64,000 nt of DNA, taken from assembly GCF_052425735.1 (NCBI RefSeq), contig NC_135762.1:16492001-16556000 (forward strand). Direction: 5' to 3'. How positions within the stretch are numbered: position 1 is the first letter of the stretch; the number at the start of each line of letters is the position of its first letter. Under the pieces are notes generated by a model. It did no database searches, was not told the DNA's origin, and saw only the letters and a program-made list of their open reading frames with translations. Source of the stretch: Oculina patagonica (lineage: Eukaryota). Positions 8,450-14,400 of this stretch are shown piece after piece. A program made the position numbers and the translations under genes.

Positions 8450-11400
8450 TTAACTGCCATAGTGGTCCTTGACTTTGTGAAGTAGAGCATCGCACATGGT
8501 TTTAGCGTCGCCCAGAAGCATACTAGTGTTGGGTTTGTAGAATACTGGGTTATCCACGTCCGCGTAACCAGTGCCCAGCGTACGCTTCATCACAATCACC
8601 TGTCAATCAAATACGCATTCAATTAACCAAAAGTCGATTGAGAAACATGAAATGTGGGACTACCTTCACCCAACAGTTTAGAGGACAGAAAAAACGAGGC
8701 AAAGCAGACAGGAAACACAATCAGCAATGTTAAGTTTTCACTGACTAAAAACTCAAATGAAAGGAGAAAATCAAGTAGGAATACTGAAAAGAAGAAAGGA
8801 AATAATCGATTTCGTAGATAGTACCACCACACCAAGAGCCTTTTGTTTTACTCGGCATTTTCTAAAGAATAGCAGGAAAAACAGCGTTTGCATTCGGAAT
8901 CCTTCTTGAGAATCGTACACTCGCATTCTCAGTTTGCCTTTTTCGAATCTCATTATTTTCGACCATGATTGTCTCAAGATCAAATTCTCATACACACACT
9001 ATATTTCGCAGCACGCTTTGCAACCCATCCCCATCACCTCCCCCCACCCCCTCCCTCCCTTTCAAAAACAGAGAGGAGAAAAACAATCAGTCAGTTAAGA
9101 ATGCATCTAGCACAACGTAAGGAACTTGCCTGTTTTGCTTTCCAAACTTCCAAAACGGGCATGCCCGCGATCACAGAATTTGGATCGTCTTGGGCAGCGG
9201 AGTTGACTGTGTCGTTAGCGCCAATCACAAGAGCGAGGTCAGTTTCAGGGAAATCTTCATTGATTTCATCCATTTCATATACGATGTCATAAGGTACTCC
9301 GGCCTCGGCTGAATGAACAAAAACACTGAACTCAGTATTTAAGAAGGCGTCAGTAGTATGGTTCGTACATATATTTGTATAAAAAATTCAACGTTTACCC
9401 GAAACGTTTTTCCTTCTAATATGGCCACCTAACCCAGATATGAACTTTTTACAACTTGAACTAAATTTCATACATTTACTTCATTACGAACAAATGTCCA
9501 TACTTACCGAGCAAGACGTTGAGTTGTCCCGGCATACGTCCCGCTACGGGATGGATCCCGAAGCGTACGTTGAGTCCCCTGTCAGTGAGTTCCTTGACCA
9601 TGTCAGCAATAGCGTACTGCGCCTTGGCTACAGCCAGTCCATAACCCGGTGTGATGATCACATCCTTGCAACCTGTCATCAGTTCCACAGCACCGTCTGC
9701 ATTGATCTCCGTGTGAGTTCCTTCTATCTTCTCCTTAGTTCCCGTGCCTGTTAGAACAGAGAATTCAAGTAACTGAGCCCGCGATTTTGGTAACCAACGT
9801 TGCTGGGCAACATGACGTATTCTTATTTTGCCATGCTGGAACTGGCACGCGACAATTTTTCCTAATGTGACCGTGGTAGGCTGGTTACCACAAATAACGA
9901 GACCGCTGGTGGTATTATCTGTGGGTTTTTCAAAATCGTACAGATACGTACAATTGGGCCTTCAAGGGTCAATAAAAATATTCGAAACTTTTCGAGTGTT
10001 TTTACAAAGGTTTGCCAACAACCGCCGCACTTGGTCCCCAGACTTGTTTGTTTGTTTGTTTTAAAATCTTGCTCAGACTCCAACACTGGTTTAAAAACAG
10101 TTTAAAATGTCGGCAATGCAGCGGATCATCCACTAAATGCAGGTGAGAAACTGAGAAGAGGGTTTGCTTCTTTACTTATTCTGAACCATCTGGTAGCAAA
10201 TTAAGGCAACGAACTGTAATAATTAGTATTCATTTAATTACTTACTGTACTAAGCACGCTGTTCAAAATTCAGCTTGTGTTGCGTCTATCCTCTTTTTAA
10301 TAACGAATTAAGTCGCAACATTGTATAAGTAGGAAATAATTGCACAAAATGCGCATCGATAATAAACTAAAATGGTGGTGCGCGCGAGCAAGTTTTTCCT
10401 GCCTTTTCTGTCATTGATTGCAGATTCTAATTGGCCGATAATCGCGCGTCAAATTTGACCTATAAAGCGCCCACCGACAACAGGGACAGGGGGGGAACGA
10501 CACACACAGGCAACAAGGGAACGGGGGAGAAAGAGACAAGGCGACACAGGGCACGGCCGGCGCGCCCCCCGGGCCCACGAGGGTCAATAGTTTGTCGTGT
10601 GAAGGTCGCTAACGAATCTTTGTGTTGAGGTTTTAAATGCTTGGTCAATTAAAAGCTTAGTTTGAGCATAGTTGGTAGGTGTCTGTAGGAAAGGCATGTT
10701 AATAAATTGTACATTTGTTCATTGCCTTTCTGACTGGTTCAGAAGACCGGAGAAACATATACCTTAGAAAACTTTAAAAAAATGGGGCGAGTTCACGGCA
10801 ATTGTGCCATCCGTTTCACGCTATGAAACGTTCTTCCAAGGCATAATTTTTGTTTAACGGAACGCCCCACCTAGAGGATTCACACAAGTAAATGACACTA
10901 CACCGAGTCGAATCCGGATATTTTCTGACTCCGATCACGCGATATGATAACAAATTATTTTTAATTAGTCCTCGTTAGAAGCGTTGCGTCATAAAAGCCA
11001 ATTGATGTCATTGCTCAAAAGCATGACACGCTCCCGAGTGTAATATCAAATGAACTGACTTCAGAGAATGTTTTCTTCGTTTTCCAGCTATGTGTGGGGT
11101 TCGCCCGAAGGAGTTCAAGGGCCTAACAACGAAGAAGTGTTGTTCGACGACTCCAAAGTTACAGAGGACGATTGGGTGCTGGTGGAAGAAGTAAAAAACA
11201 ACAGCGGCTCACAAGAAGACGGACGAGCTACTTCGCTACAAACATTGTTTGAGGAAAACGAACCGCAATTCACCGAGTCTGCAAAGGAAAAAGTTTCCGA
11301 GCCTGAATGTTCGTCGGAGAATGACAATACGGATTTGAGTGACAAGTCCTCGCTCGGGATTTTGTTCGTGGATAAACAATCAGATGCCAGCGATAAGTCA

Positions 11401-14400
11401 TCCCTAGAAATTCTATTTGCCGATGCTCAGCCGAGTGAAGGCGAAACCCAAGACAACTCAGATATCTCCATGAAAACGGACGAAACTGATTTTGGCGAGA
11501 AAACTTCACTGCAGTTTCTATTTGACGAGTCTCTACACAACCAAAGTACGGGAAATAACTCCACATCGCAATTCACTCTTAAACCACTCAAACCTGATCC
11601 ACCGGTTGTTTTGGCGCCAAACGGTGGCCAATCACGTCACTTCTACAACAGATCGTACAGCGCCGACTTCTACCGAGGAGATCCGGAAATGGCAATCGAG
11701 CCGACAGTGTTAAGGCGGCGACACGTGTCCAGAATTCACAAGCGTTCAGGCGATTCGGCGACTGCTTTGGTTGGTCATGTTGTGCTTCAGAAGAGATCCA
11801 AACAACCGGGTCCTGAGGGAACATCAGGGGTGGGGAGGGGAGAGGAGACGAGAAGGCGAACAAGAAGAGCAAACAGTGTGGCGTGCACACAGAGTGACAA
11901 CAACCATGGAAGAAGAAGGAAGCGGACTGCTGACAAATTCAGCGGAAAGGGCGGCCGAAGAAACTGCTGAGAAAATACTGTAATACAAAGTAGGTCGATA
12001 TTATTGGACGTGTTACAGTGCAATCTGGTATAGTATAGAATCCATAACTGATGCTGTAATATATTTGCAGGCCTTTTTCGTAGTGGCTCTCAAGCTTTAC
12101 GTCGCCCATTTGATCTCGTGGGCTCTTCTTTTACTCGCCACACTAATGTACATGCTTTTTTTTAAAATAAAATCAAAACTAAATCCTCGACGTCTCCAAG
12201 TCGTGAGTTAATAAGAATAATACAATTAATAACTGTGCGAATCTGAAAAGCACGAACACTTTCATTTGACTTTGACATGTCATTCGTGCCGTTTCCAAAT
12301 TAGGTGGTAGATTAAACCACAGGGATATTGACCGTTAAGCTTTCGCGTTTTCCTTCTCGCACCAATTTTGTTCTCTCTCGCGACACAAAAGTCAAGTAGC
12401 TTTATTTTAGATGACGGTTTACCTTTAAAGCTTGCTGTTTGTGAACCGTTTATATAAAACAAACTAACACAAAAAGTGGCTAGGAATACTGACGGGAAGT
12501 TATTAAATCCGAGGAGTTGAACTCGGGACTACCAAGTACAAATCCAGCTAGTCAGGGCAGGGAAGAGGGTTTGAACCCGGGAGCTCTTGACTACAACCAC
12601 TCGGTAGCCATGATACCTATTCAGTTTCCTAGCACTACATTAATTATTGACTTACCAGTAGATAATGTACCATATCCACCGAACAGTACATTAGCCAAAG
12701 ACCGATTCATAGCCTTGCACATGATATAGGACAGGATACCTCCAGAGAAGCCAACAAGAGCTCCCACGATGGTGAGCAAATCGTTGTTCAACATGAACCC
12801 CTCTGCACAGAGAGCCCAGCCACTGTAGCTGTTGAGAACAGTGATGACCACAGGCATGTCAGCTCCACCGATTGATGCTGTCATGTGAACACCCATGATG
12901 GAAGACAGGGTGGCAGCGGTACCTGCAATCCACAACATCATAAAGGAAGTTAAATCATTAGTTGTACCACATGACACTACAAACTCATATTCTCTTTAAG
13001 TACCGTTGTTGTTTTCCCCTTCCCAATGATGTTTATTGCAATTTTGATATCAAATCTCAAATATCAAGAGGAGCACGGACCGCCAGGTCTGTCCAAACAA
13101 ACATGTCTTCTACTGCAGCTTGGAGACAAAATTATTATGAACATGTCAAGTACGTTCAGTACCAGCAAGATTTCCGCACTCGATCTCTGCGCGTTTACTG
13201 TGTGATGTGTGTGCATGTCTTTTTTATGCACTTATTTTTAAGCATTCATTATTTTTTTATGACTGGCCTTACTTGCGTAGTTTGTTTCTACAACCGTGAT
13301 TAAACAAAGTAAACAAAACGTACCGAGTGGCTGACAAAAACTATTCTGATTGGTCAAATGATGTTGCACAAAAGAGTGATGGACCAACAGAGCAGTTTCA
13401 TTAAAATTATTTTATAGTACGCAGATGGTTTGAGTAGAGTAACTGACTGTTTGAAAGAATCCTTCTTTAATTACTTCAATTTCGTTTAAAACATAGCTGA
13501 CTTCTCCAAGCAAAGAACAGCGACGAAGCCGACGCTATTTGTCGGCTGTCGGTCCTTATTGAAAGCACTAAATAGAGCAATAATAAAAAGAAACAAATCA
13601 TTAGTTGGATGACTGCAACAGACGATCGGAACGCCCTGACCTCGGTCCGAACGAGAGCGAGAGGGGAGCAATGTCAAAATGGGTGAGACGGGGAGAGACG
13701 CACGGCCGCGACCTCGGCGAACGGAGAAGAGGCGGAGCCGCACTGAGAGGGACGGAGAGAAGCGCCACGACAGAGAAAAGACTGTTTTGCTGTCTATTAC
13801 TTTGAAAACACATTCCACAAATTTTCTCTTTATTATCATTATTAGAGGGCCTTACCAAGCATAGGTATCCCAACTGCAGCACTATCAGTAGCCATATACC
13901 AACCCATGGCTCCAACATTAGCCAGTGCCATAGCGATGTTTAGTTGGTTCTTGAGTGGTAGATTGAGCGCTTTGGAATCAAGCAGGCCGTGAAGTTTTCC
14001 AAAGGCCACCAGGGAGCCTGTAAAGGTCACTCCACCAATATAGGTGCCCAGAAAGATAGCTGCTTTATGGACATTCCCTGCGGGGTCATCAGCAAAGAGA
14101 TCCACATCAGCCAGGTACTTGGCAATGGCTGTAAGGACAGCGGCTAAGCCAACAAAGCTGTGAAATGCTGCAACAAGCTGTGGAAGATCACTGACTGCAA
14201 TGCGGCTGGAAATGATGGCTCCAATGGTGCCACCCACACCCATCATAGCACCCATCTGTGTCAACACGTCAGTGGAAGGTGCCAGGGCGCCAATAGTGGC
14301 AGTCATACCCGTACCTATGCCGATAATTCCTAAACACAATACAAATGAGAACTGAGTTAGAGTAGGCACTGACAGTATCAAAGCTAGCCTGTCCACACTT

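What the first reader, a model, noticed from the sequence alone, without database searches (positions are those of the whole stretch)
11068..11970. Antisense gene nested in an NNT intron: LIR-containing TP53INP/DOR-like protein
Seen: a 300-codon ORF with its own CCAAT/TATA and polyA signal sits opposite NNT inside intron 9748-12655. It starts [11 protein letters not shown] and has EDD-WVLV-EE at aa 33-41. Known: TP53INP1/TP53INP2 (DOR) have a short hydrophobic N-terminal motif followed by an acidic W-x-x-L/I/V LIR that binds ATG8 proteins, act in autophagy and stress responses, and end in a basic tail; NNT supplies mitochondrial NADPH. Inference: this may be a divergent cnidarian autophagy adaptor physically coupled, and possibly co- or counter-regulated, with the mitochondrial redox gene. 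The central WFxTPPxCF block of the family is not visible, so it could be a new LIR protein family.
Basis: partly seen in the sequence, partly recalled or inferred. Interest (0 to 1): 0.8.

Follow-up and report, generated by a model that had tools for sequence, protein, structure and literature searches.

The report
TP53INP-like gene nested in NNT
A real, conserved and transcribed but so far unnamed coral gene sits backwards inside one intron of the mitochondrial NNT gene; it is a stripped-down relative of the autophagy/transcription regulator TP53INP2 (DOR) that keeps the ATG8-binding motif and the basic tail but has swapped the family's core for a repeated short motif.

Summary
Window 11068-11970 (+) is a 300-codon ORF inside NNT intron 9747-12654, and RNA contigs confirm that splice.

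It is a real gene:
- 45 full-length homologues, 26-97% identical.
- dN/dS is 0.09-0.23.
- It is the only conserved island in an otherwise unalignable intron.
- AATAAA lies 172-221 nt after the stop in all nine loci examined.
- In one RNA run, contig depth is 140-309 over 11069-12220, against 0-10 in the rest of the intron.

In all seven genomic loci recovered, including 26-34%-identical relatives, it lies antisense in the same NNT intron.

It is not the coral's TP53INP2 orthologue. That gene (PF14839, 98.8 bits) lies on another contig. The nested protein is homologous to it at both ends:
- N-terminal MFSSxSSxVWG plus the LIR: hhalign E 2e-10, score 73 against a maximum of 22 in shuffles.
- Basic C-tail ending GKGGRRNC: score 20 against a maximum of 15.5.

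It lacks the DOR core ("region 2") and carries 2-4 (possibly 5) SSLxxLF[DE]E repeats instead. The protein is predicted to be disordered. GABARAP docking got only weak in-silico support (0.58, best control 0.02). No member carries an NCBI or UniProt name. Regulatory coupling with NNT is not shown.

Verdict: a new region-2-less variant of the DOR family.

The parts
10985..10991 (+). TGCGTCA, a CRE/ATF-like half-site. This is the first of two bZIP-type sites conserved upstream of the start codon.
   Evidence: In the upstream alignment of nine loci, the ACGTCA core is kept at this place in L001, L003, L004, L008, L009 and L010; also present in L019 by eye. Its function is inferred only.
11003..11010 (+). 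TGATGTCA, the second CRE/AP-1-like site. In L001 and L019 it is a perfect TGACGTCA.
11047..11054 (+). Conserved CAAATGAA block 14-21 nt before the start codon. It contains an upstream ATG (11050) that opens 2-4-codon mini-uORFs in the window, L008, L009 and L010. Cross-species DNA conservation starts here.
   Evidence: Whether it lies in the mRNA is not known, because the TSS is undetermined.
11068..11970 (+). Intronless CDS of 300 aa plus the stop codon: the nested DOR-like gene.
   Evidence: - ORF.
- 45 homologues.
- dN/dS 0.09-0.23.
- Single copy in the genome.
- RNA contig depth 140-309 in run X1.
11068..11100 (+). N-terminal motif [11 protein letters not shown] (aa 1-11). It is shared with canonical cnidarian TP53INP2 (MFSSLSSYIWG in sea anemones, MWTTISSYIWG in this genome).
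11149..11190 (+). 'Region 1' (aa 28-41), [15 protein letters not shown]. It is an acidic LIR with core W36-V-L-V39, which fits the GABARAP-interaction motif [W/F]-[V/I]-X-V. It is the best-conserved element of the family (D28, D34 and W36 invariant in 31 sequences).
   Evidence: - Alignments.
- GIM definition: PMC5538626.
- Homologous LIRs of DOR/TP53INP1 shown to bind LC3/GABARAP: PMC3314686.
- Complex prediction gave weak support.
11224..11532 (+). Acidic, serine-rich middle with four copies of the motif [DE]K[ST]SL[EQG]xLF[ADE][DE]. The cores are S56-E63, S95-F100, S112-D119 and S147-E154. This stretch replaces DOR region 2.
   Evidence: - Regex/alignment.
- 2-4 (possibly 5) copies in every family member.
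- No significant relation to the DOR core motif.
11458..11484 (+). Invariant SDxSMKTDE block (aa 131-139), function unknown.
11650..11760 (+). Conserved RSYSADYYR and [18 protein letters not shown] blocks (aa 195-231), containing basic R-x-x-S sites. The distant members keep a related (R/M)(I/V)TRSQKR block.
   Evidence: Function is inferred only.
11842..11967 (+). Basic C-terminal tail (aa 259-300): ...RTRRANSV...HGRRRKRT (NLS/NoLS-like, 11905-11925)...[12 protein letters not shown]. It is collinear with the canonical cnidarian DOR tail ...KKRNRMLGKHVGLHGKRGC.
   Evidence: - hhalign of the last 60 columns: E 0.001-0.003, in register with the C-terminus; score 20.1 against shuffles of 8.7 +/- 1.7, maximum 15.5.
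- NLS/NoLS plus terminal retention motif in human TP53INP2: PMC12752491.
11971..12218 (+). 3' UTR of about 250 nt, with AATAAA at 12166-12171 and contig ends at 12215-12220.
   Evidence: - AATAAA at +172 to +221 after the stop in all nine loci.
- Contigs of X1, X4 and X14 end at 12215-12220, and X1 and X4 have zero depth at 12221-12474.
12655..12923 (-). NNT exon upstream of the host intron (PNTB; contains ...[18 protein letters not shown]...).
9508..9746 (-). NNT exon downstream of the host intron (PNTB; contains ...ITPGYG...[15 protein letters not shown]...).
9747..12654 (-). NNT host intron (GT..AG on the minus strand).
   Evidence: The spliced joint 9746->12655 appears in contigs of runs X1, X3 and X4.

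Best explanation
Window 11068-11970 (+) is an intronless, independently transcribed protein-coding gene. It has sat antisense in one particular intron of NNT since before the deepest split among the lineages recovered here.

Its product is an intrinsically disordered paralogue of cnidarian TP53INP2/DOR. It keeps the two ends of that protein:
- the N-terminal MFSSxSSxVWG motif followed about 20 residues later by an acidic LIR of the GABARAP-preferring type (EDDWVLVEE);
- a basic, NLS-like C-terminal tail ending G-K-G-G-R-R-N-C.

It has lost the family's 'region 2' core (ESWYVTPPPCF...SPMEDLLIEHPSMSVY). In its place it carries 2-4 (possibly 5) tandem copies of an acidic-hydrophobic short linear motif, [DE]K[ST]SL[EQ]xLF[DE]E.

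Most likely mechanism (inferred by homology, not shown). Like TP53INP1/2, it shuttles between nucleus and cytoplasm through its basic tail and docks onto ATG8-family proteins, preferentially GABARAP, through the LIR. The repeated motifs act as a multivalent platform that brings a still unknown partner to ATG8, or serve as acidic PhixxPhiPhi-type activation modules in the nucleus.

Two conserved CRE/ATF-like sites upstream suggest bZIP control of its own promoter, independent of NNT.

Shown: gene reality, purifying selection, conserved nesting, homology of both termini, absence of region 2, disorder. Inferred: ATG8 binding, localisation, role of the repeats, promoter control.
For: **Gene reality**
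- The ORF is present.
- There are 43-45 homologues, nearly all about 285-330 aa, plus a few truncated or partial calls.
- dN/dS is 0.09-0.23; for example, window against L007 gives dN 0.012 and dS 0.094.
- It is the only alignable island in the intron between species.
- AATAAA lies 172-221 nt after the stop in 9 of 9 loci.
- In RNA run X1, which carries the spliced NNT joint, contig depth is 140-309 over 11069-12220. It is 4-10 upstream and 0 downstream, and contigs end at 12215-12220 in three runs.

**Nesting**
- The same NNT intron, on the opposite strand, holds the gene in the window, L001, L003, L006, L008, L009 and L010.

**Homology to DOR**
- The Atlas nearest clusters are TP53INP2/PF14839, score 0.90 with 191 shared features.
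- BLASTP of the N-terminus against this genome's own DOR exon 1 gives E 1e-6.
- hhalign of the nested family against the DOR family gives 95-97% probability, E 2e-8 to 2.6e-10.
- The real score is 73.3. Two hundred column shuffles give 13.7 +/- 2.5, maximum 21.7.
- The C-terminal 60 columns alone give E 0.001, in register, score 20.1. One hundred and fifty shuffles reach at most 15.5.

**LIR**
- D34 and W36 are invariant, and V37 and V39 are kept in at least 90% of 31 sequences.
- The core fits the GIM (PMC5538626).
- The homologous motif in human DOR/TP53INP1 binds all LC3/GABARAPs, and W35A/I38A abolishes that binding (PMC3314686).
- Complex prediction with a 117-aa GABARAP (L033) gave weak support. 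The score was 0.58 and the best control 0.02. The mark was reached by 51 of 78 solved complexes and 2 of 108 mismatches. At 0.60 or below it was reached by only 5 of the 78 solved complexes and by all 4 passing mismatches of 180. The runs agree in at least 60% of contacts, and the partner's pLDDT is at least 49.

**Disorder**
- AF2 gives mean pLDDT 47.7 and pTM 0.14.
Against: - PF14839 does not match the ORF or its relatives at E<=1-10.
- Region 2, one of the two defining DOR regions, is absent.
- Significant similarity is limited to about 45 N-terminal and about 40 C-terminal residues, which are short-motif-rich and compositionally biased.
- The complex score falls in the band where passes are 'more often wrong than right unless likely beforehand'. 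LIR-GABARAP complexes are solved, so the pass may be memory.
- Strand, TSS and expression level cannot be read from contigs. Two other RNA runs show only 5-16x depth over the gene, against 120-840x on NNT exons.
- No experiment on any family member exists.
Confidence: 0.72

Rival explanations
1. It is an unrelated, new family of disordered LIR proteins. On this reading the resemblance to TP53INP/DOR is convergence of short linear motifs (N-terminal hydrophobic patch, acidic LIR, basic tail).
For: - No Pfam DOR hit.
- Region 2 is absent.
- LIRs and NLS-like tails evolve convergently in many proteins (established knowledge).
- The middle 200 residues have no detectable relative.
Against: - Three collinear matches sit at the very ends of both proteins. 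MFSSLSSxVWG is nearly identical to the anemone DOR MFSSLSSYIWG, with the same ~20-residue spacing to DDxxxxDDW[VI]LV. Both proteins also end in a terminal ...G[KR]R[GN]C.
- hhalign scores 73 against a shuffle maximum of 22, and the C-terminus scores 20 against 15.5.
- The Atlas embedding independently points to PF14839.
Confidence: 0.1
2. It is chiefly a nuclear or nucleolar transcription co-regulator. The acidic SSLxxLF[DE]E repeats would be PhixxPhiPhi activation motifs, and the W-V-L-V region would act mainly as an export or activation element, with autophagy secondary or lost.
For: - In human DOR, regions 1 and 2 are needed for transcriptional activity, and the acidic residues of ...LEDLLIEH... 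matter (PMC3314686).
- The C-terminal HGRRRKR fits the R/K-R/K-x-R/K NoLS type described for TP53INP2 (PMC12752491).
- The repeats are acidic-hydrophobic.
Against: - The LIR core, including the GIM-type valines, is the most conserved element of the protein.
- This reading is not exclusive of the best explanation, since DOR itself is dual-function.
- There are no data on localisation.
Confidence: 0.12
3. The nested gene and NNT form a functional unit. On this reading, antisense transcription or shared chromatin couples a mitochondrial-redox gene to an autophagy or mitophagy adaptor, and that coupling is why the nesting is conserved.
For: - The nesting is in the same intron in all seven genomic loci, even though the intron sequence has otherwise turned over completely.
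- The ratio of nested-gene to NNT contig depth differs roughly 100-fold between RNA runs: about 2-5 in X1, about 0.01 in X3, about 0.05 in X4.
Against: - Nested genes stay nested by default, because nothing moves them out. Conservation of position alone is therefore no evidence of coupling (established knowledge of nested genes).
- The gene has its own conserved promoter footprints and polyA signal.
- Contig depths cannot rank genes (warning).
- No condition metadata were available.
Confidence: 0.08
4. It is a non-coding antisense or intronic transcript, or no gene at all, with a fortuitous ORF.
For: - No annotated protein in NCBI or UniProt matches it.
- The TSS is not determined.
Against: - dN/dS is 0.09-0.23 with saturated dS.
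- The length is kept at about 285-310 aa with no frame breaks in 45 sequences.
- Motif-level conservation persists down to 26% identity.
Confidence: 0.02

Closest known systems
Canonical cnidarian TP53INP2/DOR. In this genome it is at G000:C4:3625610-3626008, locus L002. It is 99% identical to Oculina patagonica ACROYT_G011424; named relatives include Orbicella, Exaiptasia and Nematostella TP53INP2.
   Same: - N-terminal M[FW]xx[IL]SSY[IV]WG motif.
- Acidic DD...DDW[IV]LV LIR about 20 residues later.
- Basic tail with a K/R cluster and a C-terminal ...G[KR]R[GN]C.
- Short, disordered protein.
   Different: - It lacks region 2 (ESWYVTPPPCF...SPMEDLLIEHPSMSVYG) and does not reach PF14839.
- It is 300 aa rather than about 202 aa.
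- It has SSLxxLF repeats plus the SDxSMKTDE, RSYSADYYR and RRRHVTR blocks.
- Its CDS is intronless, whereas the canonical gene has an intron right after region 1.
- It is nested in NNT rather than free-standing.
Vertebrate TP53INP1 and TP53INP2 (Sancho et al. 2012, PMC3314686; Shrestha et al. 2025, PMC12752491)
   Same: The overall logic is shared: an N-terminal LIR overlapping an export signal, a C-terminal NLS/NoLS followed by a short conserved terminal motif, and a largely disordered chain. TP53INP1's LIR (W-I-L-V, from my own knowledge of the sequence) is also GIM-type.
   Different: - The vertebrate tail ends ...QPCxRQxNY (alignment), not ...GGRRNC.
- Region 2 is present in the vertebrate proteins.
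- Invertebrates were described as having a single family gene (PMC3314686); here there is a second, divergent one.
Multivalent LIR/GIM adaptors such as PLEKHM1 (PMC5538626)
   Same: The core motif [W/F]-[V/I]-X-V is preceded by acidic residues.
   Different: There is no sequence relationship beyond the motif. The comparison is functional only.
Antisense protein-coding genes nested in introns of a host gene. The textbook case is OMG/EVI2A/EVI2B in an NF1 intron (from my own knowledge).
   Same: A small, intron-poor gene with its own promoter and polyA signal lies on the opposite strand inside a host intron, and the arrangement is stable over long evolutionary time.
   Different: The host here is NNT. 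No nested gene in NNT turned up in the literature search.

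Membership tests
DOR/TP53INP family (Pfam PF14839; Sancho et al. 2012) | Region 1: a short acidic segment near the N-terminus with the LIR core W-x-x-[ILV], overlapping a hydrophobic NES-like pattern. | tested here: met
   - EDDWVLVEE at aa 33-41, with W36 invariant.
- It aligns to region 1 of canonical DORs: BLASTP E 1e-6, hhalign E 2e-8 to 2e-10, score 73 against a shuffle maximum of 22.
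- The definition comes from PMC3314686.
DOR/TP53INP family (Pfam PF14839; Sancho et al. 2012) | Region 2: ESW[FY][VI]TPPPCF ... SP[LM]EDLLIEHPSMSVY (aa 66-112 of human DOR). | tested here: not met
   - It is absent from the ORF and from all 31 aligned relatives.
- hhalign finds no match to it.
- The repeat HMM does not score the DOR core above shuffles.
DOR/TP53INP family (Pfam PF14839; Sancho et al. 2012) | Score over the Pfam gathering threshold (25 bits). | tested here: not met
   - There are no Pfam families at E<=10 for the ORF, and none at E<=1 for P0043, P0046 and P0048.
- The positive control P0049 scores 98.3 bits.
- A six-frame genome scan finds only the canonical locus.
DOR/TP53INP family (Pfam PF14839; Sancho et al. 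2012) | N-terminal MF..L.S..[FW]G motif at residue 1. | tested here: met
   [11 protein letters not shown] compares with MFSSLSSYIWG (Exaiptasia, Actinostola) and MFQRLTSLFF (vertebrates).
DOR/TP53INP family (Pfam PF14839; Sancho et al. 2012) | C-terminal basic NLS/NoLS followed by a short conserved terminal motif. | tested here: inconclusive
   - HGRRRKR...GKGGRRNC is collinear with the cnidarian DOR tail KKRNRMLGKHVGLHGKRGC.
- hhalign gives E 0.001-0.003; 0 of 150 shuffles reach the real score.
- The vertebrate QPCxRQxNY retention motif itself is not present.
- Function is not tested. The features are defined in PMC12752491.
DOR/TP53INP family (Pfam PF14839; Sancho et al. 2012) | Binds ATG8-family proteins through the LIR. 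| tested here: inconclusive
   - Complex prediction gave weak support: score 0.58, best control 0.02.
- The mark was reached by 51/78 solved complexes and 2/108 mismatches. At <=0.60 it was reached by 5/78 solved and by all 4 passing mismatches of 180.
- Runs agree in >=60% of contacts, and the partner's pLDDT is >=49.
- A binding assay is not possible with these tools.
GABARAP-interaction motif (GIM) subclass of LIRs (Rogov et al. 2017) | Core [W/F]-[V/I]-X2-V. | tested here: met
   The window has W36-V37-L38-V39. Relatives have WVLV, WVFV, WIFV or WVWV; one lineage has WVLI.
Conserved host-nested antisense gene pair | Same host gene, same intron and opposite strand in independent lineages. 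| tested here: met
   In seven of seven genomic loci the nested gene lies antisense inside NNT, downstream of the exon with GGADMP..NSYSGW. In six of the seven the other flank, the exon with [15 protein letters not shown], is also visible; in L008 that exon lies beyond the fetched flank.

The most novel reading that the evidence does not exclude
Anthozoans carry a second, previously unnamed branch of the DOR/TP53INP family. In it the family core has been replaced by a multivalent [DE]K[ST]SL[EQ]xLF[DE]E array. That would make it a new kind of GABARAP-directed receptor or scaffold whose repeated motif recruits a specific cargo or machinery. Its permanent residence inside NNT would reflect a functional tie between mitochondrial NADPH supply and stress-induced autophagy or mitophagy in corals, for example during bleaching.
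Probability: 0.12. Interest if true: 0.85.

Novelty: new variant of a known kind. Interest (0 to 1): 0.6.

Why it matters
1. It adds a conserved, expressed gene that current coral protein catalogues appear to miss. Every homologue found comes from raw ORF calls on ENA, Logan or JGI contigs, and none comes from NCBI or UniProt. This shows that single-exon genes nested antisense in introns escape annotation.

2. The DOR/TP53INP family was described as single-copy in invertebrates and as defined by two regions. This paralogue is a natural 'region-2 deletion' that keeps the LIR and the tail. It can therefore separate what region 1 plus the tail can do alone from what needs region 2.

3. The repeated SSLxxLF[DE]E motif is a clean candidate for a new short linear motif with an unknown reader.

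4. Autophagy and mitochondrial redox are both central to cnidarian stress and bleaching biology. A GABARAP-type adaptor sitting inside NNT gives a concrete, testable locus, although coupling is not shown.

Tried and rejected
- **Pfam on the ORF and three distant relatives:** nothing.
- **Repeats derived from the DOR core?** I asked whether the SSLxxLF repeats derive from the SPMEDLLIEH motif, since both fit S-[SP]-[LM]-[EQ]-x-L-[LF]-x-E by eye. An HMM of 42 repeat instances does not score any of 15 DOR proteins above shuffles. The idea is rejected as unsupported, and the pattern is post hoc.
- **Naming the organisms behind the distant loci** (L001, L003, L004, L006): no names in the cluster look-up, no paper mentions the sample accessions, and identities to named DOR proteins are not diagnostic. 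Only relative distances can be given, from NNT exon DNA identity (81-92%).
- **Transcript ends from Logan contigs** (L007, L019): both are collinear with genomic DNA and have no polyA tail, so they are uninformative.
- **TSS:** the X1 contig starts exactly at the ATG, next to an AG/AAG indel seen in L007. This is probably a graph break, so the TSS is left open.
- **Own-genome GABARAP for the complex job:** all four ATG8 loci are multi-exon. I used a natural full-length GABARAP ORF from a JGI metagenome contig instead (L033:113-463; its C-terminal 60 residues are 97% identical to the coral exon).
- **AF2 fold:** disordered, so no fold search was run.
- **Literature:** no paper on a cnidarian second TP53INP gene or on a gene nested in NNT.

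Full report
**1. Observation**

The + strand ORF 11068-11970 encodes 300 aa, starts [11 protein letters not shown], and carries E33-DDWVLV-EE41.

The minus-strand ORFs on either side are NNT beta-subunit exons: PF02233, E 8e-40 at 12621-12977 and E 5e-28 at 9476-9688. Contigs from three public runs join 9746 to 12655 with GT..AG on the minus strand. This shows those runs hold RNA and that 9747-12654 is a spliced NNT intron.

**2. Is it a gene?**

A search of 5.8 billion proteins returned 43 homologues, nearly all about 290-330 aa and 42-97% identical. An exhaustive HMMER scan and a profile search added members at 26-34% identity: P0046, P0047, P0048 and P0169.

- **Selection.** Codon alignments give dN/dS 0.09-0.23 wherever dS is measurable. 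For example, window against L007 gives dN 0.012, dS 0.094 and omega 0.12; window against L008 gives 0.16.
- **Conservation island.** Between species, the NNT intron is unalignable except for the ORF with short flanks (for example window 11047-12020 against L008). The two NNT exons align at 71-92%.
- **PolyA signal.** An AATAAA lies 172-221 nt after the stop codon in all nine loci examined, including the most distant ones. In the window it is at 12166.
- **RNA.** In run X1 the contig depth is 140-309 from 11069 to 12220. It is 4-10 in the upstream intron and 0 at 12221-12474. Contigs of X1, X4 and X14 end at 12215-12220, about 45-50 nt after the AATAAA.
- **Weaker runs.** X3 and X4 show only about 5x and 16x over the gene, against 120-840x on NNT exons.
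- **Limits.** Contigs cannot give strand, TSS or level. The boundaries do fit the + strand signals.

The gene is single-copy in this genome.

**3. Conserved nesting**

Seven genomic loci could be read: the window, L001, L003, L006, L008, L009 and L010 (the last from a Tara Pacific metagenome). In every one the gene lies on the strand opposite to NNT. It sits between the exon encoding ...GGADMP..NSYSGW... and the exon encoding ...[15 protein letters not shown].... That is the same intron.

This holds for relatives only 26-34% identical in protein, whose NNT exons are 71-81% identical in DNA. I could not name those organisms.

**4. What the protein is**

Pfam finds nothing. The ESM Atlas embedding puts it nearest to TP53INP2/PF14839 clusters, with score 0.90 and 191 shared features.

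A six-frame scan of the window's own genome with PF14839 finds one canonical DOR gene on another contig, at 98.8 bits. That gene has two coding exons:
- MWTTISSYIWGETDEQ...DDTQSDDDWILVDV...
- ...EESWYVTPPPCF...SPMEDLLIEHPSMSVYG...KKRNRMLGKHVGLHGKRGC

It is 99% identical to an Oculina patagonica protein and is named TP53INP2 in Orbicella, Exaiptasia and Nematostella. The nested gene is therefore not the orthologue.

It is, however, homologous at both ends.

- **N-terminus.** BLASTP of the nested protein against the DOR exon-1 product (aligned over aa 1-40) gives E 1e-6. hhalign of the nested family against the DOR family gives 95.3% probability and E 2.2e-8. Against cnidarian DORs alone it gives E 2.3-2.6e-10. 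The real score is 73.3; 200 column-shuffled controls give 13.7 +/- 2.5 with a maximum of 21.7, and the reversed alignment gives 20.3.
- **C-terminus.** The last 60 columns on their own align in register with the C-terminus (...RTRRANSV...[19 protein letters not shown] against ...KKQNMVHF...KRNKKRNRMLGKHVGLHGKRGC). This gives E 0.001-0.003 and score 20.1. The 150 composition-preserving shuffles give 8.7 +/- 1.7 with a maximum of 15.5.
- **Lineage-specific features.** The W-G at positions 10-11 and the terminal ...R[GN]C occur in cnidarian DORs but not in the vertebrate DORs aligned. From this I infer a duplication within the cnidarian lineage.
- **Possible origin.** The nested CDS lacks the intron that follows region 1 in the canonical gene. 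That is compatible with a retrocopy origin, which I did not test.

**5. What is missing and what replaced it**

Sancho et al. (PMC3314686) define the family by two regions: region 1 (LIR/NES) and region 2 (aa 66-112 of human DOR). Region 2 is absent from all 31 aligned members.

In its place are 2-4 (possibly 5) copies of [DE]K[ST]SL[EQ]xLF[DE]E. There are four in the window, with cores at S56, S95, S112 and S147. An earlier first-reader note, s1-278989, records the same fourfold motif.

By eye the motif resembles SPMEDLLIEH of region 2. A repeat HMM does not score DOR proteins above shuffles, so I do not claim descent.

Other family-specific blocks are SDxSMKTDE, RSYSADYYR and [18 protein letters not shown]. 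AF2 with a 31-sequence alignment predicts disorder, with mean pLDDT 47.7 and pTM 0.14. This is expected for a protein built of short linear motifs.

**6. Mechanism**

The LIR is the most conserved element: D28, D34 and W36 are invariant, and V37 and V39 are kept in at least 90% of sequences. W-V-L-V fits the GABARAP-interaction motif [W/F]-[V/I]-X2-V (PMC5538626). The homologous motif of human DOR and TP53INP1 binds all six LC3/GABARAPs, and W35A/I38A abolishes LC3B binding and nuclear exit (PMC3314686).

In human TP53INP2 the basic C-terminal stretch is an NLS/NoLS. It is followed by a 9-residue terminal retention motif (PMC12752491). The nested protein has the same layout: HGRRRKR followed by a conserved 14-residue end.

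For a complex prediction I used residues 1-60 with a natural 117-aa GABARAP (L033:113-463). Its C-terminal 60 residues are 97% identical to the coral's own GABARAP exon. The result was 'weak support':
- Score 0.58, best control 0.02.
- The mark was reached by 51 of 78 solved complexes and 2 of 108 mismatched pairs.
- At 0.60 or under, it was reached by only 5 of the 78 solved complexes and by all 4 passing mismatches of 180.
- The runs agree in at least 60% of contacts, and the partner's pLDDT is at least 49.
- Because LIR-GABARAP complexes are solved, this may reflect likeness rather than binding.

My reading is that the protein is an ATG8 (GABARAP-leaning) docking, nucleo-cytoplasmic scaffold whose repeats recruit an unknown partner or act as acidic activation modules. 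Only the sequence features are shown; the rest is inferred by homology.

**7. Regulation and NNT**

Upstream alignment of nine loci shows two conserved CRE/ATF-like sites. In the window they are TGCGTCA at 10985 and TGATGTCA at 11003; L001 and L019 have perfect TGACGTCA. There is also a CAAATGAA block containing an upstream ATG 18 nt before the start codon.

The gene thus has its own promoter footprints and its own polyA signal.

The nested/NNT depth ratio differs by about two orders of magnitude between RNA runs. That hints at independent regulation, but contig depths cannot rank genes. Conservation of nesting is the default fate of a nested gene, so it is no evidence for coupling.

**8. Novelty**

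None of the homologues, nor any cluster member read (up to 40 per cluster for ten clusters), carries an NCBI or UniProt source or name. All come from ORF calls on ENA, Logan or JGI contigs. By contrast, the canonical DOR hits are named in several RefSeq cnidarians.

No paper on a second cnidarian TP53INP gene or on a gene nested in NNT was found.

I class it as a new variant of a known kind: a region-2-less, repeat-bearing DOR paralogue with deeply conserved antisense nesting in NNT.

Noticed in passing
window 12509-12552: A short high-copy repeat lies inside the NNT intron. Contig depth spikes to about 17,000 in run X14, and many contigs of all four runs have loose ends on both sides.
   Followed up: no
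window 10463-10609: A 147-bp GC-rich stretch is present in the window but skipped by contigs of all four runs (joints 10462/3->10610). It is an insertion private to this assembly or strain.
   Followed up: no
L002 (G000:C4:3624110-3627508), minus strand 2335-2204 and 1905-1456: This is the canonical two-exon TP53INP2/DOR gene of the same genome. It scores 98.8 bits on PF14839 and is 99% identical to Oculina patagonica ACROYT_G011424, which suggests the window comes from Oculina or a close relative.
   Followed up: yes
L011-L018 (G000 contigs C6, C4 x2, C13): The genome has four multi-exon ATG8/GABARAP-family loci. The C6 copy's last exon looks nearly identical to vertebrate GABARAP (from memory; not compared here).
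   Followed up: partly
L008 3138-3710 (-): In another coral, the same NNT intron also holds a THAP-domain ORF just upstream of the nested gene. It is probably a transposon-derived insertion that lengthened the intron.
   Followed up: no
The neighbourhood synteny is therefore kept.
   Followed up: no
window 11050-11058 (and L008, L009, L010): An upstream ATG lies within the conserved CAAATGAA block and opens a 2-4-codon mini-uORF that ends before the main ATG. In L001 the uORF overlaps the start in another frame. If it lies in the leader, it may give translational control.
   Followed up: partly
window 11170-11187 and 11710-11727 (aa 35-40 and 215-220): The AF2 model pairs the acidic LIR strand DWVLVE with the basic strand LRRRHV as a beta-hairpin-like contact. 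Confidence is low (pLDDT about 50). This hints at a possible intramolecular masking of the LIR.
   Followed up: no
L009 4913-4990: The database protein P0035 (329 aa) reads through the TGA stop after ...GGRRNC as W. This is a gene-caller genetic-code artefact, and the real product ends at the family's usual C-terminus.
   Followed up: yes
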